From the NCBI GenBank assembly GCA_964106915.2, contig OZ066916.1: a DNA stretch of 64,000 nt; one strand, written 5' to 3'. The notes beneath the pieces were generated by a model, which ran no database searches, had not been told where the DNA came from, and saw only the letters and a program-made list of their open reading frames with translations. Source of the stretch: Podarcis gaigeae. Lineage: Eukaryota. The position numbers and the translations under genes were made by a program. This document shows positions 3,271 to 46,900 of this stretch, piece after piece (the stretch's first letter is position 1; every line of letters starts with the position of its first letter).

Positions 3271-3390
3271 TTTTAACAGAGAGGAGGTGCCCCCTGGCCC
3301 TCCGGCCTTCGCTGCGCAACATGCGGAAGCCACTGTGCGTCTTGGGGTCACGTGGCCCGGCGCTTGCCATAGCGGCTCCCGGCTGTAGGG

Positions 3391-3723
3391 ATGGCGGGCG
3401 CTGCCGAGAGGAAGAAGCAGGTTCGCTTCGCTCGTCTAGAGGAGGAGGATGAAGGCGGAGGAGGAGGAGGAGGAGGAGGAAGCCGCCGCGAGGCAGAGAG
3501 TGAGTCGATGGCGACAGGAGGGGCGCCTTCGGAGGAGCCACTCGGGGGCTCTGCTGCGCGGCTCGCCCTTCAGCCGCTGGTCGTGGTGGCCGAGGGCGGC
3601 CGAAGAAGCCGGGCTGGAGGCGGCGACAGCGCCGCAAAGCGGGAAGCGGCTGTGGCGGCGGCTCCGCGGCGGGCGCTGAAATGGTGCACTTCGGCGGCTC
3701 TTTGCGCCGCTTTCCTGGGCCTG
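3391..3723 (+). CDS. MFSD4B: MFSD4B coding exon 1 (MAGAAERKKQVRF...LCAAFLGL)
   Basis: gggATGG Kozak context inside the CpG island; donor CTG|GTGAGC; 111 codons, phase 0. An alternative in-frame ATG lies at 3508. Confidence 0.85.
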
Positions 3724-3948
3724 GTGAGCTCACTCAGCGTTTCGGGGGTGGGTGGGTGGTCGTGTGTCACTCAAAGTTTCCAGGGTTTCTTCTCTGGTTG
3801 TCCATGCGAGGCTCCCTCGCAGTGCTGCCGAAGGCCCTCAGACCACGGAGGAGCCGAAGGAACGTCAGGACGGGACTCGGCACGTTCCGGTCCTTGACAC
3901 GGGCAGAAATGCGGCGTCACCGCCAGTAGATGCGTAAAAACAAGTACA

Positions 3949-4006
<58 letters not shown>

Positions 4007-10000: not shown

Positions 10001-10142
10001 TGTCATAGAAACATCCAAGACGATCGAAGGGGAATCGACACCTGCCACCTCTGCTCATCCTTCTTCAAGAAACATTTTTAATTCTTCTCCTCGGCTTACT
10101 GTCGGCTCCCCAAAACATAAGAATTCTAGTAAGAATGACTAA
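3391..10142 (+). CDS. MFSD4B: MFSD4B (SLC60A2 / KIAA1919 / NAGLT1-like) major facilitator superfamily transporter, 611 aa; join(3391..3723,5195..5363,6016..6132,8926..10142)
   Basis: Four exons with GT-AG sites join in frame (333+169+117+1217=1836 nt). Translation LCAAFLGL-GMAIAILGPTFEDLA...GVLDTGGNVLALDTWGEEAGPHMQALHFSFALGAFVAP matches the MFSD4B family as I recall it. Tail-to-tail position next to REV3L fits known amniote synteny. Confidence 0.93.
3952..4006. repeat. Compound (GT)n(GA)n microsatellite in MFSD4B intron 1
   Basis: Read directly; (TTA)n follows at 4089-4115. Confidence 0.95.
5195..5363 (+). CDS. MFSD4B: MFSD4B coding exon 2
   Basis: tttccag|GGTATG...TTGG|gtaagt; GMAIAILGPTFEDLAANV...QLLL. 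Confidence 0.95.
6016..6132 (+). CDS. MFSD4B: MFSD4B coding exon 3 (absent from the ORF track)
   Basis: cccttatag|GATTT...ACAG|gtaata; (G)FSMLGTALGLYVIPWCNKALLLTFMMSVIGFAMGVLDT(G); phase 1-1. Confidence 0.94.
8926..10142 (+). CDS. MFSD4B: MFSD4B terminal coding exon 4
   Basis: ccccacag|GTGGCAAT; continues into ORF 8943..10142 with several TM helices and an acidic cytosolic tail; TAA at 10140-10142. Confidence 0.96.
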
Positions 10143-19900: not shown

Positions 19901-22900
19901 GCTCCTTTCAGTAGTACAAACATGCTGAAATAAGATAAGGGAAATCCAGAAATGACTACAGTCATACCTCGGGTTAAATATGCTTCAGGTCGAGCGCTTT
20001 CGGGTTGTGCTCCGCAGCGATCCAGAAGTAACGGAATGCGTTACTTCCGGCTTTCGCCTCTCACGCATACGCAGACGGTCAAAATGACGTCACGCGCATA
20101 CGCGGAAGCGGCGAATCGCAACCTGTGTTTTACGTTCACTTCAGGATGCGAATGGGGATTTGGAACGGATCCTGTTTGTATCCAGAGGTACCACTGTAAT
20201 TAGCTTTCCCACTCTAAAAATATTCCAAAAGTATGGCAACTTTTTTCTCTCTCCTTGTGACTAAAAACCGAAAATGAACAGGTAAGCAATTGATATTTGT
20301 TATTTATTAAATTGGTATAGTGCTCTTCATCCATAGATCTCAGGGCAGTTCACAACATAAAAATCCAAGATAAATACACAGAAGAGATATATCTGAAGTT
20401 TGTAATGGAGTGGATGTGGGATGGTGAAATGAAACTTAATCCTAGTAGAACAGAAGTCATCTTAGTCACGTTATATGTGGGACTAACTTTAAAGACGGTT
20501 CAAAAACTTCAGCTGGTGCAGAATTCAGCGGCCAGGTTGCTCACCAGGAAAAGAGCATGTAACGCCAATCCTGGCCTGGCTGCATTGGCTGCCAATTAGT
20601 TTCTGGGCCCAACTCAAAGTGCTGGTTTTGGCTTATAAAGCCTTAAACAACTCAGGACTACAATACCTCAAGGACCGCCTTTCCCCATCTGAGCAGACCT
20701 AGACTCTACAATCATCATCTGAAACTCTTCTTCATCTGCTTCCACCATGAGAAGTCCAGAGGGTGACAACACAAACAGATCTTTTCTGTAGTAGCTCCCT
20801 GTTTATGAAATGTTCTCTCCAGGGAGGCTTGCCTGCTGCCTTTGTTACCTATCTTTAGGCACCAGGCAAAAACATTCCTCTTCTCCAAGGTCATCAGCTA
20901 ATTAAATAATTATGGCCTTTTAAACTGTTTGGGATATCATTTTTGTTTGTTATTATGTTATATATTTTTGTGTATTCATATTGTAAACTGCTCTGTGGTC
21001 CTTGGATGAAGGGTGGTATAAAAATGTAATTTAAAAAAGTGTGTGCAAGAAATAAACTTACAATTGCTGTTGTTCAGGCTTTCTTTCCTCACTTCTGCTG
21101 CAGGAAAAACACATTTTCCTTGCTTTCAAAATATATAATTTTGTTGCTGAGAAAACAAATGTTTCTTCCAGCTAACATACCTATTTTGCATATTAAATTC
21201 CTACTCTGGTTTAAAGGTTGCATATTACAAATCTACTAATTTCTGGTAAGGGAAGGAAAGGCAGTCAATGACATATTACTGGTTGGAAAGTCTCCCAAAC
21301 AAAAGAATAGTTTTAATTACCTGTCTGTGTCTCCATATACAACCCGTGCTCCCCATTTTTTTGTTTCGTTCACCAGTTTTATTGCTCGTTCCAAGGTTTC
21401 TCGGGCTTTGTGCACAATGCTATCACCAATCTGCAAAATATAAAGATAAACCTTGATAAAATCTTTCTTGTGGACAGATCATGCATATATCATTGTTCTG
21501 TAACTCATTCTATAAACTCTGTAGAAAGTTTGATCTTTTTGATTAACAGCAGCCCACTTCTTCTCCATAAGACAAAAGTTTCAAAAGCAATTTGTGCTGA
21601 AGTTTGCGGAAGGCATGTGCGTGATAACTTTAAAAATAAGAAAAGTCAAACTCTCTTGACTGTGTCCAAATAGCTCTGTGGATTGATGCATTCATCAAGA
21701 GGAAATAGCAACTGCAAGTTATTAGTAAACATGCATATAGATATTTCAAGGGCTTAGGCCCAGGAGCTGCATGGGAGCAATGTTCCCTTATCCAATTTCT
21801 ACCGATATTGCCTGCTCCCAGCCTGCCTTTTCACATTGTGCAGGACAGTCTCCTCAGTCTTCCAGAGTAGTTTTCAAGTGGGCACAAGAGAGGAGCAGCA
21901 GGAAAGCCTTGTGGCATGAGTGGTCTTATGCTTGTGTAACTCTGGATCCAACCTAAGGTGTTTATAAATCTTTAATTGCATGTCCTCCTCAGGACCCTCT
22001 GAAGTCATTGTTCCTATTTTACAATCAGAGAACTGAGGTTAAGAATCAGCCTTTGCCTTAATGTAGGTATTATTATAGTGAAGAAGAATGGGAGCGTTGG
22101 CTCCCAGTAAGTTTCTGAGCACAATTCAAAGTGTTGGTGCTGACCTTTAAAGCCCTAAACGGCCTCGGTCCTGTATACCTGAAGGAGCGTCTCCACCCCC
22201 ATCGTTCAGCCCGGACAGTGAAATCCAGCGCCAAGGGCCTTCTGGCAGTTCCCTCATTGCGAGAAGTGAGGTTACAGGGAACCAGGCAGAGGGCCTTCTT
22301 GGAAGTGGCGCCCGCCCTGGGGAACGCCCTCCCTTCAGATGTGAAGGAAATAAGCAGCTATCTTCTTCTTAAAAGACATCTGAAGGCAGCCCTGTTTAGG
22401 GAAGTTTTTAATATTTAATGCTGTATTGTTTTTAACACTCAATTGGAAGCCACCCATAGTGGCTGGGGAAACTCAGCCAGATGGGCGGGGTATAAATAAT
22501 AAATTATTATTATTGTTGTTTTCTTGTCTCTGAAATATCTTTGCACTTTACTTTCATCACTTACCTCTACACATGGCATCCTTCCAGAAAAATTAGCAGA
22601 AGTATAACCAAATGTGACATTTGCTATGAGCTTAAGGCCAAGCTGACGTGCTTCAAGCATTCGAGTGATGGCTTTGTCATTTTTATAAGCTTTCATTGAT
22701 TGCTTCACCATGATTCTAGTCTTCAGAATTTCTTCTAACATTTTTGGCAATATACCCTTTCTTACTGAAGGCTGCACAAAAACAACACCATTAAAAATTA
22801 ACATTTAATAATAAAAATATATGTTTAGCAGCAACATTAATACTGTTTATTTTAGGGTGGTTTACAGTAGACCACTGTTGGGTCAAATGTTTGTAATGCA

Positions 22901-25900
22901 GCTTATCAGATAATTTTTACACTACTGATAACCAGGTAATTTTTCCTTCTGGGAGTTAAGATAGAGTATGAGATCTCCCCACCCCCCCACCCCCAGTGGG
23001 CCAGAGCTTTGTCTGCCCCCACTTTCATGCAACAACTTTGACAGCTGAGTCAAAGCCACCCATCTGTCAATCATCTGATCAAGTGACTGGTAGGTGGCCA
23101 GTCCCACCCACTTGTCAAAGTTGATCTGTGGGGTGGTGTTCATAGCAGGGAATGTGTGCTGACAAAGCAAGCACCAAACAGTATCAAACTCTCTGCTCAT
23201 CAGCTGAATAGTGGGTTAATCCTGCTGCTTAACCTGAAGGTGCCTGTTCCCAGAAACAGCCAAACTGAGAAGGATTTAAACTCCCTGCATCAGCTAACAA
23301 GTATGGGTTAAATCCTGCTTTGGTTGTGCACGCAGAACTGGGCGGGGAGGAGGAGCATACCTAAAGCAGAATGGAACCCTGCCATCTCACCCATCACCTG
23401 ATATTATGTGTACATTGGAGTGATGTCAGCTGATTGACAGGCGAGCATGGCTTTGGTGAAATGGCCTTGCTGGCTGGTTCCCCATTCCTACTGCAGATAC
23501 TGTGTTTATTAATATGCTTTACATATTTACATTTCATGCTTCAGTGTCTTTTTTCTTCCGGAAAGCAAGATGGAAGTAGAAATAACAAGTTAAACATAAA
23601 ATGTCAACAAGAAGAATAAAGCATTACCTTAACAAAAGCAATTCCACTGGGTGACACTGTGATGTCATGACGAAGTTGATATAGCAAATCAGGAGATACT
23701 CTCAGAGAAGTGCAGCCAAACTTAAATTCATCGTATCTGGAAGATAAGACAAAGTGTACTGAACCCTCAAGTAACATCACAGACTAACTGCTATTCATAG
23801 ACAAGATTTATCCCATGCTACACACTATTTAGTGCTATGGCAGCATAAATACAGTACCTGTTTTAATTTTACATCAGATTTGTATCTCTTAAGTCTCTCT
23901 CATGCTCTAGCCTTCTCTTTGTAATCCAGCAAGCTCTCCTATGTCTTATCAGGAAATAACTTACAATTTAAAGATCAATATTAACAAAATATTTCCTTAG
24001 AGATAATCATATTGGAGTGTGCCCACCTTCCAACATCCACCCTACTGAGTCCTTGTATCATGGGCAATATATATATTTGAAACACACCTTTTCCTCCCAT
24101 ATTTCATCTACGTATTCCTTGGTATGCATGTATGGGAGACTGAATCCACCCACACACAAGCAGTCAGGAGTTACACACTTGTTTTGATGCACTTCTAAAA
24201 TTGTATATTTCAAAAATGCTGTTCACAAGTTCTGTCTCTGCAGCCAAGAAGTAGATTAATAGAATTACAAAAATCCCAGACGACAACTTCTTTTTTTAAA
24301 AGAAAAACAACTTCCTGGTTGCATGGTTTGAGAAGTGGTGGGCTAAATGTATTCCATTTGATCTTTCAAGTACTTATTAAGTAGCAGAGAAAATGCATCT
24401 AGATTTTAAATATTTAATACTTACTTTCCCAAGTTCTCAATATGTCCCAAGCATGTGGAATAACAGTAGTTGTATGCTATCACAATAGATGGATATAAAG
24501 ATTGAAAATCTAGTACAAGGACAGCATTACTGTAGAAACGGGATTCTGGCTCCATTATTAAAGGAATACACTGAGGGGCTCTCATTTGAGCTCGTTGCTG
24601 GACACTCGGTGTAACAGCAATGTAATTCATTGGTTTGGCAATACGTAACATCATTGACTCCACACGGTACTACAAAAGAAAAACATTAATTACTGATACT
24701 TTTGAATGTTCATGTATTCTTAAAATATATTCCTGTGGTGTGGAGACTAATGAACAATATAAGTGGACTTTGTGAGCCTTTATGGCGGTTAAAAGACATT
24801 ACACCCACTGTCTACTACTTCACAGAAGATTTCACTTCTTTTCTATATTCAAATGTATGCCTTGTTAACTGCCAGTCTTGTTTAGATACCCACTGGAGCA
24901 CAGAAACTGCTTATATTGACCTGTATGTTTAAATTATAATTGATGGAGTATTCTTACTGTCAATGTCTGCTGGCAATGTTTTCATCCTCTTTTCTCTTTC
25001 TTATATTTGCAAATAAAAATACTGATCTGGTATGACTATACATTTAATATTATTTTCCTAATAAGCAGCAAGGCTAGTGGCAATTGGATTTTTAATGTCT
25101 TTTAGAAATGACCCCTTGTTTGTGAAAACTTCCAAGGTTCAAAACGTGAGAAAAATTCTGAGGTCCCAACAACTTCTCAAAAATATTAAGGACAGCTTAC
25201 CTGCGATCCTCTTGTTAATACATGCAAGAACTGAATTCCAAAAAGCCTTGCCATTTCACTTGTTCTGCCAATTAAGTCCACTTGTTCTAACAGCTGGAGA
25301 TTTCCACGGACACGGCTTGTGTAGTAATCAATCATTTTCCAGCTTTAAAATCAAATAATAAATGTACAAAAATCTTAAAAGTCTTAAAGGATGATCTAGG
25401 AAAAAAAACTTTCAAGGCAGTAATCAACAGTTTGCAGCTCTAAGAAATTGATGTGCAGCCCTATTAGTTCTCTTGGAGGCTTTTAACATAAGGTTAAGTC
25501 CAGTAATAATCCATAGTATCCTTCTGGACCACCTGAATGGGTTGTTCCTTGGTTTATTTTTTGTTCTTTCTGTTGCACCATATCCAGAATGTGGTGCTGG
25601 GGGACTACTGTTCCACACCACGGCCTTGTCTTCTATGTTACTTAATATATAAATGAAACTGCTGGGAAGGGCAATTCAGAGCTTTGACATAAGGTGACAT
25701 AGATTTTATACCTTAAAATTAGAAGTGGAGTGACTTACTATGCCACTCATTATTAATTTGATGCATTATGAAAACAATGCACTAAGTCACTTCTAAAGTA
25801 GCATGACTACTTTTTTCTGTTTTTTCTTAGCTTCAATAATTTCAAGGTCATTCTTATCACTGGTGCATTAATTCAGCTATCCCAGCTATTAAAGGTAAAG

Positions 25901-28900
25901 GTAAAGGTACCCCTGCCCATACGGGCCAGTCGTGTCTGTGGGGTTGTGCGCCCATCTCGCTTAAGAGGCCGGGGGCCAGCACTGTCCGAAGACACTTCCG
26001 GGTCACGTGGCCAGCGTGACAAGCTGCATCTGGCGAGCCAGCGCAGTGCACGGAAACGCCGTTTACCTTTCCGCTAGTAAGCGGTCCCTATTTATCGACT
26101 TGCACCCGGGGGTGCTTTTGAACTGCTAGGTTGGCAGGCGCTGGGACCAAGCAACGGGGATTCGAACCACCGACCTGACGATCGGCAAGTCCTAGGCACT
26201 GAGGTTTCACCCACAGCGCCACCCGCGTCCCTATCCTAGCTATTAAGGGGTAGCAATTTGTTATTTATTGCTTGAATAAGAATAAACTGGAAGGAAAACT
26301 GCACCATGAAGTTCTGTTACACTTGAGATATACAACAATGGTAAAGTCTAGTTAACATGTTACCTTTACAGCACAATTGCCACTCCTGTGATCAGCAACC
26401 ATGTTACATAACTACTTATGTCTGATATTCAGCAATATACAGTATATCTTTGATAATGTCAGTACTTTGCACATGAGCACCACATCTTCACTGGGTCTGT
26501 TGAAGTGCCACTTGATCCACCTCCAGTGGTACCTGGTCATGCAGGAGTGGTATGCAAACTTGACTAAGTCAAAGGTAGCCAACGCGATGGCCTCCAGAGT
26601 ACGTTGGGCTACAACTGCTGTCATCTATGACCATAGGCTATGATGGTTGGGGTTGGTGGGAACTGTAGTGCTAAATCATCTGGAAGGCACCACATTGGTC
26701 AGTGCTGCCTTAACTGATCAAATGATATGGGTAGAAAGTTGATTTGTGCACTACGGAATGGCAGCACATTTGTTATTCTTCTGTCAGGAGCCAACTTTGT
26801 TTCATTTTTTCCTTGCTAATTAAGTTCTCATTTGGTTTGAAAACTTTATATACAACAGATCAGACTTTGATTCAGGAAGCATACTTTAAAATACTCATAA
26901 GAACTGGTACTTACCGATAGATGTCTGTCTTGTTGTCAAACCAATCAGACAGAACGCGAGAGGTAAACAGTGGAAAGCGCTGATGAAGTATATGAAAGCC
27001 CACATTTTCAAAAGTATAGTTAGTTAGAGTCACCTAAAATAAGAGAAGACTTGTATGATCACTTGCCTATATAATTTGTCCTGGTAAGGTGGAGTGGAAG
27101 AGTAAGAATTACAGGGTATGTTTAAAAATGCTCACAACTTTTACTGGTTATAGCTTGCACAGTTTGCCATGGCATAGCACAGAACAAGGAAACAGGTTCA
27201 AGACAACCACTCAGCTCAAATACTTCAATAGATCCATCAATGGATAGAAGGCAAGCTCAGGCCCACTGTGTAGACTGGTACTATGAGCTATCACTGCAAC
27301 CACCCTGGGTGTGTTGCAGGCTTGCTAGCGCGTGAGCTGGGTTTGGCTCTGAAGTGACCCCAAGATCCATGATGAGGGTCCTGCAATGGGGAGGCAGCCC
27401 CTGCTATGTATGTGACTGTCTTCAAGGTCTGCCACACAGTTATGATGAAACTACAGGGCAATGTAATCAAATCATCATTGAAGAACATTGCTGTGGGGAA
27501 GGCAATACCTTTGTAATTGCTAAGCCAGTTGTGACTATGAGTAAAATTAACCAGCAACTTAATCAATTGTAAGGTGAAGTGTGCTATAAGACAAGAATGG
27601 AAGTTGACAGCACTGTTGAGGCCCAGGCCAGGCCAACTTTTCATAACCCAGGAATGGACCAGAAGGGAAGGGAGGGTTTCCCCTCTGGTTCATACCATGA
27701 TCTGCCCCCAGGAAGCCAACAGGCGCAACCACTGCTGGTGGGGCTCTGCCTGCAGCGGGGGGGGGGGGGGGGGAGAGCACAGATCATCATCTGAACATGC
27801 AAAAGGAAGTTCAAACACCCATAAAGTAGACAATTAGAGGGACTAAGGGGGGAAACAACTGGTTTTTCACCAAGAATTAGAAATGTCTTATGGCCATGCT
27901 TTTTCATTACATAATCCAGAAGAAATCACATTAGTTTGCAGCAAAAACCAAGAGACCTATGGCAAGTCAATCGTGGCATAAACCATCAAAGACCAGAGTT
28001 CGTTTTATCAGATGCTCCTTTCTGTATCTGATGATAATGGCTCTGGCCCCTGAAAACATACACCACAATTCATTTGTTAGCCTTTCAGGTGTCATAGGAC
28101 TCTTTGATTTGTCAACACAGTTGTTACCAGTAGTATAATTAATAATATCAGCAAGTGTAATAAAGAAGGAATTAAACCAGTAGGCAGCCAGTGCTGAAAT
28201 GCAAGGTGGCCCTTGAACAGAGAATAGGTTATGTGAGTGGAATATGCTATAGAGTAAAGCATCAGCTCAGCAAAATAATGGAAGATTATGATTATAACTG
28301 CATTTCCATGGATTTCATATTTCCTGTACTGATAACAAGCATATGGGAAGAAGGAGATACAAATTTGCAAACTCCAAGATAAGAAAATGGTTTTTTATTG
28401 AAAATATGGCATTTATTTCAAAGTAGGTTTTTTGTGATTTTGCCAAAGTTTACCTCATTTCTCATAATTCTCCAGATATTCAGCATAACCCTTCCAACAA
28501 TGTTTATTTCACTCATTGTATCAGACCCATATTCATCTTGATCTGAAGTAAATCTGTTTTCTTTCTTATCATCTAAATCATTAAAAGAGAATATTTCAGC
28601 AACTCAAATCAACTTTAGTACAAATACAATGAAATATTTATCAGAAGGAAAAGTCATCTTCTGAACCTATAAACTAGAGTAGTGGTGGTCAATCTTTCTG
28701 GCAAGAATAACACAAAAAAGGCCAAAATACTGCTACTAGATAGTATGTTACAGCAAATATGAAAATCTTTGTGGTTTGTTGTGGGTTTTCTTTTTATTCT
28801 ACTTAGGAATGCAGGTCTGATTTTATAATGGAATCTGGTTTGCAGACTCTCCCAATTTCTGTTCACACATGTTAAAGTCACCTGTAGCATCTGTAAGGCA

Positions 28901-31900
28901 TATCCGTAATCCATGCACTAGAAGAACCAGAAATGTTCATTATTTTGTGTTTTTAAAATCTTTGCCCTTACAGCTTACCATATTTTTCTGTGTATAACAT
29001 GACCCCATGTATAAGACAACCCCTATTTTTGGGAGCCCTCAACAGTTGTTTAGCTTCTTTTGTAAGTTTGCTGAGCTGTTGAGCAGCTTTTCGACGATCC
29101 CCTGCTCTGGCTGATGGGACTGGTGCCGCAATACACCGCATACTGGCACTCACCAGATACTCTTCCTAAGCCAGGAAGAGCGGGGAAGCAGTCTCCTCTC
29201 CGACATTTCCCTGTCACCGCTGTAGCACCAGCCCTTGCTTACTTAGCATATTAACCCGTGTATAAGACGAGCCTCAATTTATCACAAAAAATTCAAAAAA
29301 GGTCGTCTTATACATGGAAAAGTAGAGTACTTACTTTTTATCATATTCCAAGGTTTCATCACTCATATAAATTGTCCAGAAGCAGCATCCACGGCACTAC
29401 TCATGGCTTGCATGTCACTTCAAACCATAGCTAACCTTAACCATAGTTAAGTGAAAGCTGGGGCTATGGGCTGGAATTGTGGGCACTTTACTTCTTCCTC
29501 ATTCCCGCTGCTATGTTGCCAAGAGCAAAGCCATGGTTTGGTTTAATGTTACGGATGAACCTGGGCTTCTCTCTCCCCCCAAAGAAACCACAAGCTAAAT
29601 GCTACTCCCTCCACCGCTAGGTTTGTTTGTTTGTTTGGAGGGAACAAACCATGAGCCCACAGATGGGCGGGGTTATAAATAATAAATTAAATGATGATGA
29701 TGATGATGATGTAAAACTAACCCAGACCATGGCTTAGCTATCAGCAGCAGGAAAAGAGCAAAGTGCCTGTGATTTTAGCCATGTGCACCAGCACACTGTA
29801 CCCTTGAAATTACAACTAAGCTTAACTATGATTTTAAGTAGTGAGGGGGAACCCTCACATGGGCCTAGTTAGGCCCATCAGGATTACCCATTTGGCCCGT
29901 GAAGCCACCTTCTACACACAGCCACCTGCCCTACACCTCATATATGATGTTGGGGCGGGGGGTGGGATAAAGTTGCAGCTCCCTGCTGAAAGTGGGGTTT
30001 GAAGGTACTGAAGATCAGCTGTCCCAGCAAAGCCCTGTGCCTCTGCAAGCCCTGATTATCATGCTGATGCTTGCAAAGACATAGGGCTTTGTGACTACCA
30101 ACAACCAGCTAACCATTGGAGCCTGCAAAGTGTGCCTTTACCCATTCTTTCTTAATTCAAATTGTGTGATCAAAGGAAAATGGATTGCCTGATGTCACTG
30201 GGACATCAGGTGATTGATAGGTGGGCAGGCAAAGTATGACTCCAACCCATTGGTTGGATTCAGTTCCACACCCTAGGTTTAAAGTAGTGTGTGAAGAAGA
30301 CCACAGTTCTATATGGTTTCCATTATGCAAACTGGTTTATATTTAGTCACTCTTCCTCAGGTTCTTATTTTGTGGACACTCTACACAGGATATGGCTCTC
30401 CCACTGTTCATTGCAGTGACTCAGGTACTCAAATGCTTCTCCCTTGGCTAGCTGCTTCATCTATTTCTGCTCCCATCTCTTCAAACAAAAGATAAACAAC
30501 CACTACTCTAATACAGAAAACTGAAAGAAGGATCCTTGCTAGCTGACTGAACAGAATGCATGTAGTCAAGCTTCCTAGTGAGAGACAGTGAAAAACACTA
30601 AAATTGGAACAGTAACACCGTATTTTTCCATGTATAAGATGCCCCCATGTATAAGACGACCCTTATTTTTTGGAACCCCAGATTAAGAAAAATGAAACCC
30701 TAAAATAGAAGTGAAAATCTGGATGATTGATGGTGGCATGTTGTTGATCTTTTTGGGGGCAATTGCCCTCAAAGTTTCCAGCATGAGGTGCATGCAGTGC
30801 ACTGTGGTGCAGAAGCAAAGGCAGTGACTGCAGAAGCAGGCTCCCAAGCAGGATGCCAAGGAAGAACCGGGGAAGGCAGGGGGGGAAGCAGCCGGAAGGA
30901 CCGCCTCAGCCCGCCCAAGCCAAACATATGCTTAAATATTTTAAATATTTTAAAAATTCCCCCAGATGCCCATGTTCTGTGTAAAAGACAACCACCAGTT
31001 TTTAACTATTTTTTTTATAGCAAAACACCTCATCTTATATACAAAAAAATTGGTACTAATGGCTTTATACCTGGAATAATAGTAGAATAAAACCACGGCT
31101 TCTCACAATTATTAATAACTTTAGAATTAGGAACCTTAGAATCATAAACACACCTGGAACACGTGAGACCATTTGGCATAAATCAACACCTAGAGCAGCA
31201 GCTCTCTGCAAGAGGTATCCCCAGGAATGCATCTGAACTTCATAGCCCAGCAAAATATCTGGATCATACCTAAAAAGAGAACACACATTTTCTTCATAGA
31301 ACCATGTGCTCTTTTTTGTTTCAGCAAACCTACTCAGACATGTAATTTTAGCATTTCACGTCAACTAAAAGTTATGCTTTTAAAAATTACTCATTTTTTC
31401 TATTTTACCATCTTATGTCGTTTGTTTTTAATGTTTGCTTTTACAGGTATTTTTAATGGATGTTTTATATTTTGTTGTAAACTGCTTAGAGGACATTGTT
31501 GTTCTAGTATGCAGTATATAAACTCTGTTAAATAAATAAAATAATAAACTCAACAAATTTATACTGAATTTAATGCCAGCAGCCTAATATAAACATGAAG
31601 TCTTGCTTGAGTAAAGAAGGAAGAACATACCGTGAGTCAGAAAACACAATCTACACAAAAAAAAAGGTACTGAGTATGCAAAAGTCTGCCACGTGGATGG
31701 GGCTACGGAGAAAAACTGAACACATTTAATTACAAATAACAAAAATTCCGTATTTATCCCCATGTGGAAACTTGTACCCAAGTGTAAGCATGAAGTGCCA
31801 TGTATCCATAGTTGTGTATATCATTCCCTTGGTGCTTTCTCTGGATTAGGTCTAACATGTATATTTTCGTAATGACAATTTTGGAAATACAAGCAATTAA

Positions 31901-34900
31901 CCACAAATAACTGGTGGAGAATTCCCTTCTAGTTCCCATGGGGAGGGGAGAGGCTGGGATCCAAAGAGCCAGTTTAGGTATGTATGGTGACATGTTGTTA
32001 CTTTTAAAACAGCAGGTCCTTATGCCATGTCATAAGGTCCATGTTTGAAACTCCCAGTGTCCCCTGGAAGGTTGCTGTGTGATACATAATTATTTTGAAC
32101 TTAGCTAGTAAATACTTTGCCTGCTTTAGATGTGACGCAATATGCTGGTTCAAATGCCAGTAACACTCATACAGAGGCTGCATTTGAAAGAGAATTGGTA
32201 TCTCCATACAAGGGCCGTTTATACTTTTTGTGACTTGTGTGATCGGGGCACTTCAAAAAAGCACTGCAGTAACCATATGAATCATGGTAGCCAGTGCTTT
32301 TTTCTTTAAAAAAAATGTTTGGGGGTACTCTCATTATCCTACTCATATTGAAATACTGCCCCTCAATGAGGCCAAACTTAGATTCACAAAATGTTTAGGG
32401 GTATGCATACCCCTGCGTACCCCCAGAAAAAAGCACTGACAGTTGCCATGTAGAAAACCACCACTTGGAAGCTCTAATTCTCACAAGTAATACTTATAGT
32501 GAGTTCTCAATGACTTAAATTCAAATGAGAAGAGAAAATATCACCATGTTTGAGGAATCTGTAATGTTTCACATAAGTAGGGAAAAATTATAGTAGAGTT
32601 ACATTGTCCAGTTGGCAGAGATAATGTGGGATTTAGATTCACTGAGAGTATTAATGTTTTGCTTTATATTTTTGTGAGCTGCTTAGAGGCTCTCTTACAA
32701 TCAAGCAGTATATAAGTGTTGTACTGTATCAAGACTGCTGCTTGGAGCCCATATGACTGAATGTTTGTCCATACAAAATATTTCCTTCACAGAGAAAGCA
32801 AGACCCAGGTACAGCATTACAAGCTCAGTGAGAATGACGCCCAAGTTATATACATCACTGCAGGAAAAATGTACACATTTCACCATAAAGCAGGAGCAAT
32901 TCCTTAGCTCCCTCTGCAAAAGTAACATGCTCTATAGAAAGCTTCATTTGCTATAATTTCATGCTTATCCTTCAAACTGCATTGTCTTATAAAATGATGA
33001 CACACAACCAGGTAAATTCTGCACACGCAGCAAGGCTTCAAAGGCTCTATTTACAGAAAAAGCCTAGACAATGTACTTCAGAAGCAGCCTCCAACATTGC
33101 ACTAGAACCTGCTGCCATGTAATACTGTGGCTCTTTGAATTATGGTAAGTATCTAAAAATGTTAATCCATAAAACTTTGCTTAACACGTCAGATTTCTAT
33201 GCCTCCTTGTGAGCAGAGGTGAGACACTCTGGACATTGGTTCTGCGTGATGTGCATATGCTGCCCTTGCTCAGTATTTTAACGAAGAGTGATTTTCCTTT
33301 TCACTTTTTCAGCACTCTGAGCCTAAACCATGTAGCTTCCCAGCCAAAATCTTATGATTGATAGACTGAGGAATGCCTTTAGTTTAGTTGTTACATACTA
33401 ATTTCTTCGATGGTTTTCTAATCTGTTATGGCTCAGGCCAACCCACCCACTATTCAAAGTATAGTCTTTGTACCCAGTAGTGGATTGGGATGGGCAGCAG
33501 ATCAGTGGCCTCCTTAGCCTGTCCACTGTTGCCAACATTCTTCTGGCTGGCCACTGCTGTTGTCTGAAACTTCAGCAGAACTGCTACAACTTTGCTGTTA
33601 TAGTGGTCCTAAAGGGCTCTCTAGGTCATCTATATCTCTATCTGCAGAAGGGTTCTTCCTCAAGAGTGGGCATTGTGGACGCTTCTTTAAAGTTTCAGAG
33701 TTTACTGCTAAAAAACTTTAAACAGTCCTTGCTGCCATAAAGTGGCAGCAATGCAGACATTATCCAGGGCCACCTTGCTTCAAGGAAGGGTGTGTGTGTG
33801 TGTGTTTAAAAGAACATAGTCAACATACTTTGATTCCTTAAAAATACCCCCAAAAACATTTCCCCCATCTAGAACTGCTTGGTGTTTTAAAATGAAAATG
33901 TGGGTTATTATTATTTGACTTAAAAGGCAAAAGGGCACCCAACAGATTCTGTTGTGAAAGCTTTGTTCTATACTTCACAGACTCTTGTGCTTTCACTAAG
34001 TAGTGTACCACAGACCCAGTAGGTTATTTCTCTCTCTCTTTTTCCCCTGCATTCTTCTACAGTAGGTTTGGACAAACTGGCCATGCTGACTTGAGCTGTT
34101 AAGAGTTGGAGACAATTGACATCTGGAGGGCCAGTGGTCAGGGATGATGGGAGTTGTACTCTAATAACATTTAGAGTGCCATAGGTTAGCCACCTCTGTT
34201 CTACAGGTTATATTCCTTTTCATTTCAGAAGAGAGAATACTTTTCTAAATTGCACAGTTTAGACAAAAAGGAACTGTAGGACATTCAAACATATAAAAAT
34301 TATTTGGTAAGGCTTATCCATTAGTAACATTAGGGAATATTGGATTTCTCAAAACATTTTTTCAGGTCATTTGTACTATTAAAAAATAGAAGTTTCTTCT
34401 AGGAAATAATTTGGTTCTTTTTGTAAAAGTTCTCATTTCTGAATTAACTCAACAGGCTTTTAAGAAATTATAACAGAGACATCATTATCTTCAGTTTTAC
34501 TTTAATGTAGCCAGAAAAATCTACAGCAGCAGCTTCCATAGCTAAAAGGATGTCACCTACAAATATCACCATTTTATTATAGATACTGCCAACTTGAACT
34601 TGTGAACATAATTTGCTTCTATCCTGAACTTGCTGAAAAGATCTTCAAAGTGAAACTGTGGAGCAATCATAGTTCAGTGGCAAAGCATCTGCTCTGTGTG
34701 CAGAAGTTCCCAGGTTCAACTGCCAGCATCTTCATGAAGCAGGTGACCCTGCCTGACCTGCTAGTGAGCCGGTGCCTGTCAGAGCACTAAATGTCTTGGG
34801 TAGGAGGATCAATAGCCTGACCCTCTACAAAGCAGTTTGCCAAATCCTATGTCACTGAAACCTTGTCAAATCTTGGCCAGGTTAAGTCAATGAGGTTTGT

Positions 34901-37900
34901 ATGGAATCCAAACGACAAATGATATTTGCTGTATTGTTTTGGACTATCCCTAGGTTCAAACAACTGCTGGTCTTATTTGTATGGCTAAGTAGTTGGATTG
35001 AATTCAGCATCAGAATCAATAGCTCCTAAAGAAAAAAATCCACAACATCACAGAAATGTCAAAAAACATTTTCATTTGGATTTTCTCCATTCAGCAGTCT
35101 TTTCAATAAATCAAGTGATGCATAATAATCAGCAACAAAAGCTATTATAGGATTTATGAGTCCAATATAATTATTATTAATGATGAAGGGTAGTATATAA
35201 ATTTAATAAATAAATATAATAGTAACTGGGGGGGAAAGAGGTTAAATTCTTGTCAGCTCTCATAGTGAAATTGAAAACACATTTATTCTGAAGTACGTCA
35301 TTGATTTTACAGAAAGATGTTGCAAAGAATGTGGCCCAAAAGGAATAGTTTAGGTATTAATTGCTGTTCTTCCTGAGACCTCTGTGTTTTATATGAGCAG
35401 TCAATTATATAACTCCCACAGTATCTCCATCATCAAGAAGGTATGGTAAAATTAGTTTGCCCTTTAATCTGGTATTTAAAACAAACAAATGTGAAATTCT
35501 CTTTACCATCAAGGTAAAGAAACAATATTAATAGAAAATTATTTAAAAAGAATGAAAAAGAGCAAATGTCTCTACTGTTCTAAGCTGAGAACTGCCTAAA
35601 AAAAGTCTTGTGTCAACTTTTCTAGAGGGGTTATGAACTGCTATCCTTCAAGGGATAAAAACAGCCTAATCAAAATATTTGAAGGTACACACGATATTCC
35701 ACTTGTTGTACAGACGTTGCAAATAGGCACACAGCACTTCAAAAGCTGTTCCCCAGGTAACTTTGAATGTCCACCACAAATATATTAGAAATTGGTGTGC
35801 TTTCTTCATTCAATAAAGCCTTCAGCAGTTAAGTCTTCAGAAATACAAATAAATTGTACCGATATTCTTTGGCATGGTTTCATGTGGCCAAGTGGCATTT
35901 TCCCCAAATAGTGGAGCACTTTATAGGAAAAATAAAAGTAGCAGGTTGTTACTTCCAAGTTGTTTCCTAAGCCAGACGGAGCAGCGGATTCCCAAAAAAG
36001 AGAAAGAAAAAATTAATTTCCTTACCTGTAATTTTGTCTTCTCTGAACAGGAATCCGCTGCTTCGCCAGGACCCACCCAGTGTTGGTTGCTCTCAGCAAC
36101 TCTTTAGTACTCTGGTTTCCTGGATTTAGTCAATGCCATTCTCATCAGAAGTTTTCTAGTCAGAGAGAGAGAGAATTGCAAATGTACTCTGCCTAGTACA
36201 CATTTTCCTTGAGAATGTATTCCAGCCAGATGTTTCAAAATTTTGTTTCCTTGGTAACATTCAGACTTTGAGGTTTTGGCTATTGACCTGAAGAAAGACA
36301 CACCTGAAGTTCCACAGGCCATGATCAGAGTTTGCTACAAAAACTGGCCAGGAACTTTTCAAACCAGGGGAAAATAAGGACTTTCACATTGAGAGAAGAC
36401 ATGTAAAGAGGCCAGTTTTTATATCTGTTTATGTCTGTACCACTATGAGATATGAGTTTTGCGATAAAGTTCTTTTTTTAAAAAAAAATCTTCCTACTTA
36501 AGACAGTGTATGTTTTAATTTGTATTGCAAGATCATTTAAACCTTAGAGTATTTTCTAATAAACATTGAAATGCAGTTTGGGAATATTAAAACTCCAGCA
36601 AGATTGATGTGAGAGGCCTGTATAAGAGAGACTTGCATAAAGAACCTTATAATATAGATATATCTGTTGTGAGCAGGAAAAACAGACTTTTCCAAGAAAT
36701 CAAAACCATTTAAACATGGGAAGAGAAGGTAGGGAAACTTGGATTTGAAAATGTTTAAATAAAAGTTTCAGAGGATGAAAAAGCAGGGTCTACAGATGCC
36801 CTACCTTTTAACAATGTTCACCACTTCCTGGAAAAGTGCTCTCTCATCAGCAGCATATTTGACTTCCAATCCTGAGATGCCAGATCTGGTAAGCAAAGGT
36901 GCATGTTCTCTGTTACCTGAAAAGCAAATTAAATACTTATTTCTAGTAAAATACCACCGTGTTGTTGTTTTAAATAAAAAACACACATTAAAATTAAGCC
37001 ATGATTTTTCATTGTTCAAGTCCCCTGCCACTACTGCTCATTGCAGACAATGAATAGTTGGTGGAGATTTCGTATTTGAACAAACTGTGGGAAAGCATGC
37101 ACATGCTTTTGTACTTTATAGAGCTCTGATTTAAGTAATTATCTTTTGCTCAAGTGTTTATGACCTTTCATCAGCATAAATGTGGTACAATAAAGTGTGG
37201 CACCTCCCAAGCTTACTTCTAAATTTTGGAGAAAAAGATTTAGCTTTCACCACTCAACAGAGTGATAATAAAGGCTCTGTCCACACATTATGGTAAACCA
37301 TACTCAGTGGTTTACAGGGGAACTTTATTTCAGAAAATGGTTTACCAAGATGTGCAAACCAAGCCAGCCTCATTTGAAATGTGATTCATAAGCAATTTTC
37401 TATATTTTTTTCCAATCAGTTCATGAGAGCTTGGCATTTAATAGCAACTAACAAATAGATGTTTTAAATGAATGCAATTTTCAGCAGTCCTCAGTTTCTA
37501 ATATACTTGATCCAAAGAATGGAAACCTTTTACATCCACAACAGTATGACTACTTATGTTTAATGAACATTATAAGAGCTGTGCTATATCACATTAATCA
37601 TTCTGCAAATAATTTTTAAAAACTTAATATTTTATGCAGACATTTACAACAAGTACAAAATTCTGGTTGCCTCAGGTATTAGATGCATGGGAGGGCATCT
37701 CTTTGAAGTGACACTCAGGCTATGATGGAGAAGATTAAGAGCAGCAGTTGCCAATCACTAAGGTGGCATGGTGGGAAAGGGGTTAACAATGCTAGGATCT
37801 GAGAGAGCTGTTCTGCACTCTACTGCCTGTGCATGGGATAAGTAGGACCACATCCAATATTCAAACTGTCAAAAATGCATTAGTTATTTGATTCAAACAA

Positions 37901-40900
37901 TAATCAGAATAAATCTTATCACTTAACCATTTCAAATAGATGTGAGTTTTAAAAACAGCAAAGCAAGACTGAAAGCGATTAGTGGCCTTAAACCAAAATC
38001 TAGACAGGACAATATATAATAATTTATTATTTATACCCCGCCCATCTGGCTGGGCCTCCCCAGCCACTCTGGGCGGCTTCCATATAGAAGTGATAGATTA
38101 ACCATAAGCTATGCATTACTTTATTCACTGATGTATCAAATAAACCAAGAGACTCGAAAAATGCCAGCACTCAATACTAATAAATAAAGAACTCTGCAAC
38201 ATTAAATGGGGAAATTCTGTGTTTACAATCTAGTCTTATTCATAAATTCTTTTTCAGAATCCATCAAGTTAGCCTCCAGGAAGTCAGGAAAATTTAGTAC
38301 AATGATCTATTGCTTTAGAAAGTAAAAAATTGAAGAAAGTAAGATAAGAACAGGAAATTAATATTCTTAACATCTAGAAATAAAAGTGGATGAAAGATAG
38401 AAGTTTTGTCATAATGCTAATTTCTTATTTTTCTCAGAACCTTAAAGCTAGGCAGCATGAAGTTGTTTAATGATAAATCATCTCACAGAGTTTAACATTT
38501 TACTCTCAATATCAAATCTATTTTTGTTTACTAGCCTAAACCAGTGGTACTCAACCTTTAACAGCTGGAGAGCCACTTCACCATTAACTGTTGTTGCAGA
38601 GCATAACATCAAGTACCAACATTGCAACCTTGCATCATGATGTTACATTAATTTGTGATGATGCCGTGCCACCACAAATACCATATGTTACAAGACATTT
38701 TGTAATCTTCAGTTTCTATTAGCTGCTGGGAAAAAGAGGGAGGTTTCCCCATTCTCCCCCCATGGCTGCTGGGTTGGAGGCAATTTCTATTCTTACCTGT
38801 GGGGAGATCCCAGCAGCTCCTTCGCTTTCCTCCTATGGGAGGAGGTACTTCAGTGACTCCCACACTGCCGGTCCTTTGGTCAGTGCTCCCCGCGCTGCCT
38901 GATAGAATGGAGCGCCGATCAGATGCCTACACTGCGAGAGCCGCCTGTAGGGCCTCAAGAGCATCCGGCTCTAGAGCCACAGGTTGAGTATCACTGGTCT
39001 AAACAAAGCCAAAAAGGTACAATACAATAAGGGCCCTGTTTAGACCCTACAAAGATCAGAGAAAACCACACAACAACCCTTATGCAATATTTAACAAAAT
39101 CAACTTGCTATTTCTACTAAAATCAATTTTGACAGATTACCAAAGTTGCTGTTCTCGAACAGTCCCAATGCAAACTAAAAGGAACTGGTCCAGCACAAGG
39201 GTTTTGAGTACTTCCTTCTAAGACATGTTTTCCTGTTTATATCTTCTGGACTTCTGCAGGAGCATGCAGTGAAATATTAAACTTTGGTTTAATATATTAT
39301 TAATTGGTATTTAAAAGCATTATAGCCCTTGCAAATGTGCGCAGGAAGATATAAGGCAGAAACCATTACTATGCTTCTCATGATTGGACAGTGAGATGAC
39401 ATAAATTTAAACAACACTAGCAAAGAGCCTTCAAAGCCACATTTTCTCATATTGTTCATTAATACCCAAATATGACAACATTCAAACACTGAAGTAAATT
39501 CCTAAAATAAAATTGAAATAAGAACCTTGGCTTGAGATTGTTCTTGTTCTGTCTTTATCAATCACTATAGCACCAGTGATTTCCATTTTATCAGTATTTG
39601 GCAACGATGTGTCAGATGATATGCAGTAGAATAGAGCACAGATAGGATCAAATTCAGGATCTGCCTCCAAGTCTCTTCTTGTTCGAGCATGCAACTCTAC
39701 ACTGAGAAGTGTAAGATGTTGAACCTACAGCAAAAAGTATACATTGTTATCTTCTTTTACGATACCTTTGAATCAAATCAAATACGAAACTATCAATTTA
39801 TTTTACATGCTGGTCAATAAAAATAACCTCACGTTTGCTTGTGGAAATTGAGAAAAATATAGAGTATGTTTTGTGATAATTATAATAACTGGGATTAAAT
39901 GAAAGAAGTATAGGAAATCTAGACTGTTGCTCGCTACTATTGAAGATTTATGGATTTTTTTTAAAAGTACCAATCTGCAGCAGGAATCTGATACTTAAAA
40001 GCCATGTATTTTATACACTGCATTAAATTTTGATATTACTGTATTTCAAACAGCTTGTGTCATTCCCTATCTTAACACTTTCTGAGGATTTTTTTTAGCA
40101 GGATGCCAAAACCAAATATTAATATTCAAATGCAATCACTACCAAACAAGCACCCATATAAGAAATTACAGTCAAGATACCCAGAAACTCCCACATCAGC
40201 TAATTTTTAATCACTATGTAAACAGAGTAAGAATTGCCCAATTATACATGTTCCATAATAATACATATTTTTAGCTAATTCAGGATATGACCAGTGTGCA
40301 AGAGGAAAACTGACACATAGCATCCACCCTGCTTGAATGGCTCTGAAATTTAGACTTCACATTAAATTTATTTTAAAGGCAGGTGGTTACATCCACAATA
40401 CACAAAGCATACCAAAATATAACTCAACAGAAAAAAATTATACATGGATTATTTGAATGTGAAATCCAAAGAAAATACATACTAAATGAGTTATACCTAA
40501 TTAGTTTTGACACAAAGTAAGGGGAATTTAAAAGAGAAGACTGCAGATAATCAGGAGGGTGACTTCTGTGAGTTGGCATGTTTTCCATTAATCTGCCCAT
40601 CATTCCATCTGCAAGTCCTTTCCCTCTCTTCCTCTAGACTTGAGGATAAGCTTGGAGAATACCATGACATCAACTGCCAGATACCTCCATGTATCTCTAT
40701 CCCATTGTATGCTTTATGGATTTTAAATGCAAACTGCTTGGGGAGCCAACTGCGGCTGAAAAGCAGGGCAGTAAATTATTTTATCAGAACGAGTTGTTAA
40801 CTTTCCACAAGCTGACAAATTTTAATGCTAATCAAGCACAGGTCATCAGTACAAGAGATAATGTAACATAGCCTTTGCCAATCTGGTGCTTTCCATATAT

Positions 40901-43900: not shown

Positions 43901-46900
43901 GGAGAAAGTAATGAGTGACTACCACAACAAAAATATACTAAAGCATCCTTTAGGTAAAGGGTAAAGGGACCTCTGACCATTAGGTCCAGTCATGACCGAC
44001 TCTGGGGTTGCAGCACTCATCTCGCTTTATTGGCCCGAGGGAGCCGGTGTACAGCTTCTGGGTCACGTGGCCAGCAGTGCACAGAAACGCCATTTACCTT
44101 CCCGCCGGAGCGGTACCTATTTATCTACTTGCACTCTGACGTGCTTTCAAACTGCTAGGTTGGCATTGGCAGGGACCGAGCAATGGGAGCTCACCCCGTC
44201 GTGGGGATTCGAACCGCCGACCTTCTGATCGGCAAGTCCTAGGCTCTGTGGTTTAACCCACAGTGCCACCCGCGTCCCCTCAAAGCATCCTTTAGTATTA
44301 CTGAATTAATTTTTCAAAAGCTACAAAATGTTAAGTACAATATCAAGGCATAGAATGGTCTGACACTGCAGCATCTTATACTGCTGGTCCTAAAAGTTAT
44401 CCCAAGTATAAAAACTAATCTTCATTTCCTTGGTCATGCTAATTACATATTATGGAAAAAATCAAGTTATTCTGGTTAAGGCTATTTTCTATTAGTAAAC
44501 CTTAAACTACTTGTCTAATAATACTTCTATAAGTGGTTTCAAGCTTTTATTGCCTATCTTCTATTGCATAAGTACATATATGTTTGCATAATTTCACTTT
44601 CAATTTCTGTAAACCACTCCTTTCATAATCTTACCTGGTAATAATGGAGTGAATCCAGGTGTTTCAGTTATTCCTCCTTTACACATTTCCTCTCTAAGGG
44701 GTGTACTATGCAGGCAAGCAGTTTCAGAATTACTATTGCATCCTTTGTTCACAAATGGGGAGACAGTGAAGGGTATCTTGCTTTCCTCTTTGACAAGCTT
44801 CTGTTCTCCATCTGTTAATGTTTCATTTTCTTCCATAGAGGATAAAATATCCTCTGAATCTTCTGAGGAAGATTGTTTGGAATCTGGGGATGTTACTTGT
44901 TGCCAAGGCGGAAGCACTGATGAATCAGGGGAGCTATAATCAACATAATTCTCCTCATCCCTGTCTGTTTCTATTGCTGCAGTGTCAAGCAGCACAGTCT
45001 TACTTATTTCAGGGATATCTGTATCATGCTTATCCATGGTTTGTGTTGGCATTGGATTTGAGGATGAAAAACAAGTACCTTCTGATGCTACAACACTTTT
45101 GCTTGGCAAGATAGAATTCTCAACTGCCTTGGCCATTTGAGAACACATGTTTTTTGGCAAAGACATGCAGTTCAAACTCTCATCAACCTTTTCCACCTCA
45201 ATCGATTTGGTAATCATTCTTTTCCTAAAGTGTTCATAATCTTCTTTTGCCTGCAGCCATGACTGAACTTGCTGGCAACTTGGTGCACATTTGCAAGGCA
45301 TGATCACTATCTTTTTGTCTTCACTAGTTTTACGGTTATTTCTTTGCTTTTTGTCAGTAGTGGATTGGCTACTGCGAAGCGGAGAACCTGGTCTAGGGCT
45401 TTGTGCCATTGCCAAAAATGCAGTCTTCCATAGTCGCAGCCCTTCCAATGAGAAGTCTCCCTCAAACTCAAGTAGGTCATTTGGAAGTCTGGTTTCTACT
45501 GTAAGCAGTCGTCCTCCAATTTCTCTGTGAAGATATTATTTTCAGTTAGCAATAAATTTATCTTACTAGAAGAAAAGAACTGTCAGGAAAAAAGATTCTT
45601 GTATTTGTCAATATCCAAATTAGGTCATCCACATTTCAAAGACAGACAAGTTTTGATTCACATTTCAATACTCCCCATAGCAACTCCCCATAGCAATAGC
45701 TAATGACTATGAATTGTATTCAGTATTGCATGAGCAATAGATCTTTTCCTTTGCCCTTATAAGTCCTTCTGCTCAATTTTGGGTGATACCTCCTGCCAAC
45801 TTCAACCTTGTGTAATACAGTATGTCATGCCCCCACCCTCAGGAGAGGTTTTACAAGATAGATAATGGAAGCAGGAAGGGAAAGGTAAGACTGACTGTTA
45901 AAGTTTGTTTTCTACACCTGCAACATTGAATACAACCCTATGTTAAATTCTTCAAGGTGCCCAGAATTTATGAATCTGCAAAGATAAAGCAGAATATTTT
46001 CTTTTTATAGAATTTTAGGATTTCCCAAACCTGGGTTTTCAGCTCTTTTTGGACTACAATTCCAACCATGGCTTACCACTAATCTTGCTAGCTAGAGATG
46101 ATGGGAACTGTAGTCCAAAAACAGTTGGAGATCCAAGTTTTGGAAACCCTGTTGTAGATTAATGAGCTACTTTAACCCCATGGAATTCTGGCTCTTGCTT
46201 AAGGGAACAGGAAAGAATGCTACATTAAAGCTACACCTAATTTTTCCATGACTATATAAATTATGTAAAAGCCAACTAAAAATACATAGGTATAAAATAG
46301 AAAAATGTGACTAGTCCACTGGTATTACCACATTACCTTGGCTTTTCTGGTGCATCAGAAGGGTTGCTGCAAAATGGTTCCTGATAAATTGCTTCTGCAA
46401 GATCGTGATCCAGTAAAGTTGACATAATTTCTTCACGACTTGGAGGTGACATGAGAGGCTTAAGGATGTGAGCAGCACGAGGTGTAGAACTTCCATTTTT
46501 TGACTGTGAGGGGGAATTTGTAGATCTAGGTGAACTATCTGGGGTTGGTGTTAATGCCTCATTGTTTCTTGAAATATACAGCTCTAAATCTTCAGAAGCT
46601 GCATCCATAAGTTCACCATCCGGTGATGATAAAATGGAAGAAAAAGATATACTAATTGAATCAAGTGACTGAACAGGTTCAAAAGTGGCTTCCTTTCTAA
46701 AGTGGTTTTGACTCCAATCACTATTTGGCGATGAAAGGTTAAGAAAAATTCCTTTCTTCACTGCATTTCTCTCCAATTGAAATTGTTCCTTTTGGCACAT
46801 CTCTGCCTGTTGCACATCTAGTGGTAAGCTAGGTTCAGATGTTGATGTAATAATGTTATTTTTCCACTGGCTGTGGAGATGGTTTTCATTCGTATCTGGG

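What the first reader, a model, noticed from the sequence alone, without database searches (positions are those of the whole stretch)
36026..36287. Hidden poison cassette exon in REV3L that would remove the whole polymerase domain
Seen: in the 5.5-kb intron between exons 36805-36916 and 31154-31269, the minus strand has a strong acceptor (ttctctctctctctgactag| at 36155) and a strong donor (ACAG|GTAAGG at 36026), defining a 130-nt exon. Spliced to the upstream phase-2 exon it reads RKLLMRMALTKSRKPEY-TAA, with the stop 78 nt before its own donor. A second good acceptor (tgtgtctttcttcag| at 36287) lies exactly 132 nt upstream in the same frame and reaches the same stop. I saw no transposon signature in the surrounding ~1 kb. 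Known: a stop more than 50-55 nt upstream of a junction triggers NMD. Inference: regulated unproductive splicing that limits mutagenic Pol zeta, or a REV7-binding but polymerase-less truncated protein. I do not know whether it is annotated in other species.
Basis: partly seen in the sequence, partly recalled or inferred. Interest (0 to 1): 0.8.

Follow-up and report, generated by a model that had tools for sequence, protein, structure and literature searches.

The report
Conserved poison exon in lizard REV3L
In lizards, snakes and birds the gene for the error-prone DNA polymerase zeta carries a hidden extra exon that is really spliced into some transcripts and stops the protein before its polymerase part, most likely a built-in dial that turns the gene down.

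Summary
Confirmed and extended. The window is Podarcis wall-lizard REV3L. The 130-nt exon 36155-36026 is spliced: RNA data show the joint 36805>36155 (three runs, two studies; 3 raw reads plus a contig) and 36026>31269 (one contig), beside the skipped form. The exon and ~60-nt flanks are 92-97% identical in Varanus and two snakes and 76-84% in a bird (a second bird matches), against 44-70% for the surrounding intron. All nine sequences keep both splice sites and a stop 66-102 nt before the exon's donor; length is never 3n and the peptide is not kept. This fits a sauropsid-conserved poison exon. NMD itself and regulation were not testable. The second acceptor (36287) has no RNA support and is lost in Crotalus and birds. 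In squamates a 34-bp hairpin holds the donor in its loop (flagged earlier in this scan on this same window); in birds the same exon arm is predicted to pair upstream instead. A second, even more conserved stop-bearing candidate exon (39046-38797), overlapping a hAT-like transposon relic, lies in the previous intron. Mammals untested. No paper on this exon was found; two snake RefSeq models contain it as an in-frame insert.

The parts
36805..36916 (-). Upstream constitutive REV3L exon (112 nt, ends in phase 2); holds a very weak internal donor at 36825 that two snake RefSeq models use
36358..36413 (-). Position of the upstream complementary element; strong in birds (pairs with the exon's 3' arm and donor), only a remnant in squamates, not above shuffles in this window
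36287..36300 (-). Second possible acceptor (262-nt form); kept in lacertids, Varanus, Python, lost in Crotalus and birds; no RNA joint seen
36156..36215 (-). Conserved 3' splice-site region and pyrimidine tract (83-97% outside lacertids)
36026..36155 (-). 130-nt cassette (poison) exon, spliced in RNA
36104..36106 (-). Premature stop TAA, 78 nt before the cassette donor
35975..36067 (-). Predicted 34-bp exon-intron hairpin (-42 kcal/mol, z about -7 in all squamates) with the 5' splice site in a 13-nt apical loop (36028-36016)
31154..31269 (-). Downstream constitutive REV3L exon (116 nt)
38797..39046 (-). Second candidate poison exon (250 nt, stop 194 nt before its donor) in the previous intron; splicing not tested
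38542..38996 (.). hAT-like non-autonomous transposon relic overlapping the second candidate exon (15-nt terminal inverted repeats, 8-bp target duplication matching at 7 of 8)
   Evidence: read from the alignment; family assignment is inference

Best explanation
The 130-nt segment is a poison cassette exon of REV3L that arose before the lizard-bird split. Shown: in a share of transcripts it is spliced between the exons at 36805 and 31269, placing a stop after residue ~2400 of ~3118, inside the exonuclease-like domain and ahead of the whole polymerase domain and the C-terminal metal-binding module. Inferred from established NMD rules: with the stop 78 nt before its own junction and 14 exons downstream, the mRNA is degraded, so the inclusion rate sets the amount of productive Pol zeta mRNA. 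Inferred, less firmly (about even odds): inclusion is tuned by RNA structure. In squamates the exon's 3' arm pairs with the downstream intron and displays the 5' splice site in a loop; in birds it pairs with an upstream intron element that partly covers the 5' splice site.
For: Joint 36805>36155 in raw RNA runs X22 (2 reads) and X23 (1 read) and contig run X7 (depth 8.1); joint 36026>31269 in X7 (8.1) beside the skip joint (30.6); cassette reads lie on the same strand as the REV3L exon reads. Snake RefSeq isoforms XP_063167158.1 and XP_039207138.1 contain the same exon with the same ends. Identity to Varanus/Python/Crotalus 0.92-0.97 and to bird 0.76-0.84 over exon and flanks, as high as or above the coding exon (0.88-0.89, 0.80), versus 0.56-0.70 and 0.44-0.45 in nearby intron. 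Lengths 130/127/128/130, stops TAA/TGA/TAG/TGA at 78/102/76/66 nt before the donor. Domain positions from Pfam. Hairpin energy and conservation; partner choice in ensemble folding.
Against: No NMD-inhibited or condition series was available. Read numbers are small, and the tool drops human-like reads, so inclusion levels (about 20% in X7) are rough and may be biased upward. A fair steady-state level could also mean weak NMD. Run X14 (another species) showed the skip joint and unspliced pieces but no inclusion joint. Covariation in the hairpin rests on two both-sided changes from one bird, so structure is predicted, not proven.
Confidence: 0.84

Rival explanations
1. The main selected function is the hairpin as a Microprocessor substrate (splice-site-overlapping microRNA or Drosha-bound hairpin); exon inclusion is a side effect.
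For: 34-bp stem with 13-nt loop, near-invariant across squamates; only sub-threshold Rfam hits, mostly to miRNA precursor models; precedents in DROSHA exon 7 (PMC5473138) and eIF4H exon 5 (PMC4006729).
Against: In both birds the local hairpin is weak (about -19 to -20 kcal/mol; z about 0 in Alectura) while the exon, both splice sites and the stop are kept; conservation extends 150 nt upstream of the hairpin over the acceptor; no Rfam family at gathering score.
Confidence: 0.07
2. The inclusion transcript escapes NMD and yields a polymerase-less REV3L (~2400 aa) that keeps its REV7-binding region and acts as a scaffold or dominant negative.
For: Appreciable steady-state inclusion; the 16-residue tail is identical in lacertids, Python and Crotalus.
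Against: Tail is frameshifted in Varanus and differs in birds; none of roughly 400 retrieved REV3L-related proteins ends in this peptide; 14 downstream exons favour NMD.
Confidence: 0.05
3. The exon is coding: together with a donor 20 nt inside the upstream exon it inserts 36 residues in frame, as two snake RefSeq models show.
For: Candoia and Crotalus models; frame open in Python and Crotalus.
Against: That frame is closed in all lacertids, Varanus and the bird; the shifted donor scores below every real donor in the window; no such joint in RNA.
Confidence: 0.02
4. The block is conserved as a DNA element (enhancer) and the splicing is noise.
For: Few raw junction reads.
Against: Conservation is centred on the two splice sites and falls off about 60-75 nt outside them; contig-level inclusion about one fifth; stop retained through different codons.
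Confidence: 0.02

Closest known systems
Conserved poison exons (AS-NMD), e.g. SR-protein genes, Smndc1 (PMC11357089), Tra2b (PMC11791180)
   Same: Cassette with premature stop, exon and flanks as conserved as coding sequence, peptide not conserved.
   Different: Host is a translesion polymerase, not a splicing factor, so simple autoregulation is unlikely; shown here only for sauropsids.
Rev1 and Polq cryptic exons in mouse ES cells (DPPA5A; PMC10372678)
   Same: Unproductive exon inclusion lowers a mutagenic polymerase; that paper also lists Rev3l among genes with more cryptic-exon inclusion in ES cells.
   Different: The paper's main text gives no Rev3l coordinates, so identity with this exon could not be checked; here conservation over about 280 My (divergence time from own knowledge) and an RNA structure are seen.
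Structure-controlled poison exons of BRD2/BRD3 (PMC10789245)
   Same: Complementary regions around a poison exon predicted to set inclusion.
   Different: Here the exon's own 3' arm is one strand and its partner differs between squamates (downstream) and birds (upstream).
DROSHA exon 7 hairpin (PMC5473138) and eIF4H exon 5 (PMC4006729)
   Same: Pre-miRNA-like hairpin overlapping an alternative exon; the DROSHA one spans an exon-intron junction.
   Different: Microprocessor binding or cleavage is untested here; the hairpin is not kept in birds.
Known REV3L splicing events: 5' alternative exon (mouse 'exon 2', circadian, PMC3446320; 128-nt human 5' insert, from memory) and RBMX-repressed cryptic acceptor in exon 13 (10.1101/2020.10.09.333039)
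   Same: Same gene, unproductive or shortening outcomes.
   Different: Different positions; this exon lies about 2380 codons into the reading frame.

Membership tests
Poison exon (AS-NMD) | Spliced as a cassette between two constitutive exons | tested here: met
   Both joints at canonical intron ends; upstream joint in 3 runs, downstream joint in 1 contig; same exon ends in two snake RefSeq models
Poison exon (AS-NMD) | Alternative: a skipped, productive form exists | tested here: met
   Skip joint at depth 30.6 (X7) and 14.6 (X14)
Poison exon (AS-NMD) | Premature stop more than 50-55 nt upstream of a downstream junction | tested here: met
   66-102 nt before its own donor in 9 sequences
Poison exon (AS-NMD) | Splice sites, flanks and stop conserved, peptide not | tested here: met
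Poison exon (AS-NMD) | Inclusion isoform is stabilised when NMD is blocked | not testable with these tools
   No UPF1/SMG1/cycloheximide data available
Poison exon (AS-NMD) | Inclusion is regulated across tissues or conditions | tested here: inconclusive
   Cassette depth differs between X22 and X23 but on a handful of reads; sample identities are coded
Microprocessor-substrate hairpin / splice-site-overlapping miRNA | About 35-bp stem with a loop of 10 nt or more across a splice site | tested here: met
   Predicted 34 pairs, 13-nt loop in squamates
Microprocessor-substrate hairpin / splice-site-overlapping miRNA | Small-RNA duplex reads or Drosha-dependent cleavage | not testable with these tools
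   No small-RNA run was laid
Microprocessor-substrate hairpin / splice-site-overlapping miRNA | Match to a curated miRNA family | tested here: not met
   Best Rfam scores 17-22 bits against gathering 50-100
Coding alternative exon | Frame-preserving and open across species | tested here: not met
   Open only in snakes and only with a shifted donor

The most novel reading that the evidence does not exclude
Reptiles and birds limit Pol zeta through a pair of poison exons in adjacent REV3L introns, one exapted from a hAT transposon, and the exon studied here is governed by a structural switch whose pairing partner was swapped in evolution: a splice-site-displaying, pri-miRNA-like hairpin in squamates versus a splice-site-masking long-range duplex in birds.
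Probability: 0.3. Interest if true: 0.75.

Novelty: new member of a known kind. Interest (0 to 1): 0.58.

Why it matters
Pol zeta makes many damage-induced mutations and its level is thought to be kept low, but how is poorly known. A conserved, spliced stop-exon gives a concrete, deletable control element. Because it is present in birds it can probably be tested in chicken DT40 cells, a standard Pol zeta model (chicken itself was not checked here). The lineage-specific change of pairing partner offers a natural experiment on how RNA structure around a 5' splice site sets poison-exon inclusion. It also suggests that two snake RefSeq isoforms are mis-framed.

Tried and rejected
Mammalian ortholog: the deer locus L008 has an assembly gap over almost the whole intron (left unfilled); three other mammal look-ups returned no gene and Rhineura exceeded the size limit; turtle, crocodile and frog introns were not fetched. 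Human sequence was not sought. A metagenome scan gave only one further bird, twice. Protein searches found no isoform ending in the cassette peptide. Rfam: nothing at gathering score. The inverted repeat 22444-22510/38016-38082 is an intronic dispersed repeat, unrelated. The first splice-site null missed an exon and misplaced one acceptor and was replaced. The upstream complementary element is not above shuffles in the window, Lacerta or Python, so a switch within squamates is not claimed. Predicted pairing did not change between 20 and 41 C, so there is no support for an RNA thermometer. No similarity or notable complementarity between the two conserved blocks. Nine literature searches found no report of this exon; supplements of three candidate papers were not held and one held supplement had no REV3L hit.

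Full report
Setting. The window holds most of REV3L on the minus strand; a 30-exon model opens one frame of 3007 codons. The large exon is 99.1% identical in protein to Podarcis raffonei, 98.1-98.5% to P. muralis and P. lilfordi and 96.5% to Lacerta and Zootoca, so this is a Podarcis lizard. There are no N stretches in the window.

Observation. On a small matrix trained on the window's own sites the donor outscores all 29 real donors; the 36155 acceptor is modest (beats 7 of 30). Six pseudo-exons with both sites above the lower quartile of real sites occur in 40 kb of intron, so site strength alone would not single this one out.

Conservation. Orthologous genes were fetched for P. raffonei, Lacerta, Zootoca, Varanus, Python, Crotalus and the brush-turkey Alectura, and a second bird came from a metagenome contig. 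The exon and its 55-60-nt flanks are 92-97% identical to Varanus and the snakes and 76-84% to Alectura, at or above the neighbouring coding exon (88-89% and 80%) except for the bird's downstream flank, whereas nearby intron is 56-70% and 44-45%. Across all REV3L introns in the window only two blocks are conserved this way, and four of the six pseudo-exons have no alignable counterpart. Both splice sites are kept in all nine sequences, 638-763 nt behind the upstream exon. Lengths are 130, 127, 128 and 130 nt. With the normal donor a stop always falls inside the exon, 66-102 nt before its donor, through different codons, and the peptide changes in Varanus and birds. Selection thus appears to act on splicing and on the stop, not on a peptide. 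The second acceptor is lost in Crotalus and birds.

Expression. Fourteen small contig sets guessed to be RNA, from five studies, hold words of the exon. Laying two raw RNA runs and two contig sets on 31154-36916 gave the joint 36805>36155 in X22 (2 reads), X23 (1 read) and X7 (depth 8.1), and 36026>31269 in X7 (8.1) beside the skip joint (30.6), about one fifth inclusion. Raw-read cover of the exon is on the same strand as that of the REV3L exons. No joint uses 36287 or 36825. X14, another species, showed skipping and unspliced pieces only. The numbers are small, and human-like reads are silently dropped, which may explain why the raw runs list no skip joint; levels are therefore rough. Independently, RefSeq models of Candoia aspera and Crotalus tigris contain the same exon. 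They keep the frame open by ending the upstream exon 20 nt early; that frame is closed in lacertids, Varanus and the bird and the shifted donor scores below every real donor, so I read these models as support for the exon but not for its frame (inference).

Consequence. Inclusion ends the protein at about residue 2400 (junction at 2383 in P. raffonei), within the exonuclease-like domain (2229-2472) and before the polymerase (2538-2988) and C4 module (3030-3097). With 14 exons downstream, NMD is the expected fate (established rule, not tested).

RNA structure. Prompted by scan note s1-692070 I folded the donor region. In all squamates the last 40 nt of the exon pair with the first 50 nt of the intron: 34 pairs, about -42 kcal/mol, z about -7, with the 5' splice site in a 13-nt loop. 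Squamate substitutions fall on unpaired positions or keep a pair; the two both-sided changes come from the bird, which is weak covariation evidence. In both birds the local hairpin is weak (-19 to -20) and the same arm instead pairs with an element 240-300 nt upstream of the acceptor (-52 and -44 kcal/mol; above all 200 shuffles), partly covering the donor. Ensemble folding assigns the arm downstream in squamates (0.83) and upstream in birds (0.8) at 20-41 C. Squamates keep only a remnant of the upstream element. These are predictions; that structure sets inclusion is about an even bet. The squamate stem resembles a Microprocessor substrate, as at DROSHA exon 7 (PMC5473138), but matches no Rfam family.

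A neighbour. The other conserved block, in the previous intron, holds a 250-nt candidate exon 39046-38797 with good sites, 97-100% identity per 100 nt at best to Varanus, snakes and bird, and a stop 179-195 nt before its donor in the seven sequences scored. It overlaps a 455-bp element with terminal inverted repeats and an 8-bp target duplication, typical of hAT transposons (inference). It is not detectable in the gap-free orthologous deer intron. Its splicing was not tested.

Comparison and verdict. The exon meets the four poison-exon criteria testable here; NMD sensitivity was not testable and regulation is inconclusive. The nearest precedents are the Rev1/Polq cryptic exons of mouse ES cells (PMC10372678, which names Rev3l without coordinates), structure-controlled BRD2/BRD3 exons (PMC10789245) and the DROSHA hairpin. 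Known REV3L events lie elsewhere in the gene (PMC3446320; 10.1101/2020.10.09.333039). I found no description of this exon in the searchable library, which omits most subscription papers and splicing databases, so an existing annotation in chicken or mammals cannot be excluded. Verdict: a real, sauropsid-conserved poison exon, a new member of a known kind, with an unusual structural setting. Joined spliced sequences were used only in local scripts, never in searches; mammals remain untested.

Noticed in passing
window 39046-38797 (-), block 38480-39160: Second, even more conserved stop-bearing candidate exon in the previous REV3L intron, overlapping a hAT-like transposon relic (38542-38996); a 9-bp stem is predicted around its donor; undetectable in deer; the P. 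raffonei assembly has AAG instead of TAG at its acceptor. Splicing untested; deserves its own RNA check.
   Followed up: partly
P0307 (XP_063167158.1), P0315 (XP_039207138.1); L007:52271-52398: Snake RefSeq isoforms include the exon as a 36-residue in-frame insert through a weak donor 20 nt inside the upstream exon; probably mis-framed models.
   Followed up: partly
L006 about 15639-15690; L009 about 3560-3635: Bird upstream element is both complementary to the exon's 3' arm and similar to the downstream arm, i.e. three copies of one ~60-nt motif; possibly a relic of an old inverted-repeat element.
   Followed up: partly
P0263 (Lerista edwardsae), P0271 (Ophiophagus hannah): Gene predictions include pieces of the first and second conserved exon respectively, suggesting both are present in a skink and a cobra.
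   Followed up: no
window 51067 (-): Consensus donor AAG|GTAAGT with several upstream AGs (e.g. 51225) in the intron before the large exon; not conserved outside lacertids at the thresholds used.
   Followed up: partly
window 19052-19417, 25897-26230, 43955-44288; 22444-22516, 29655-29689, 38009-38082: Sauria-SINE-like copies and short lacertid repeat ends; the copies at 19052, 25897, 43955 and 38019-38082 are absent from P. raffonei, so recent insertions.
   Followed up: partly
window about 3370-10140 (+): An MFS-transporter-like gene (MFSD4B by synteny, from memory) lies tail to tail with REV3L.
   Followed up: no
window 31530-32715: RNA reads and a contig join 32715 back to 31530 with 9 letters between, in three runs; probably reads from a related repeat elsewhere.
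   Followed up: no
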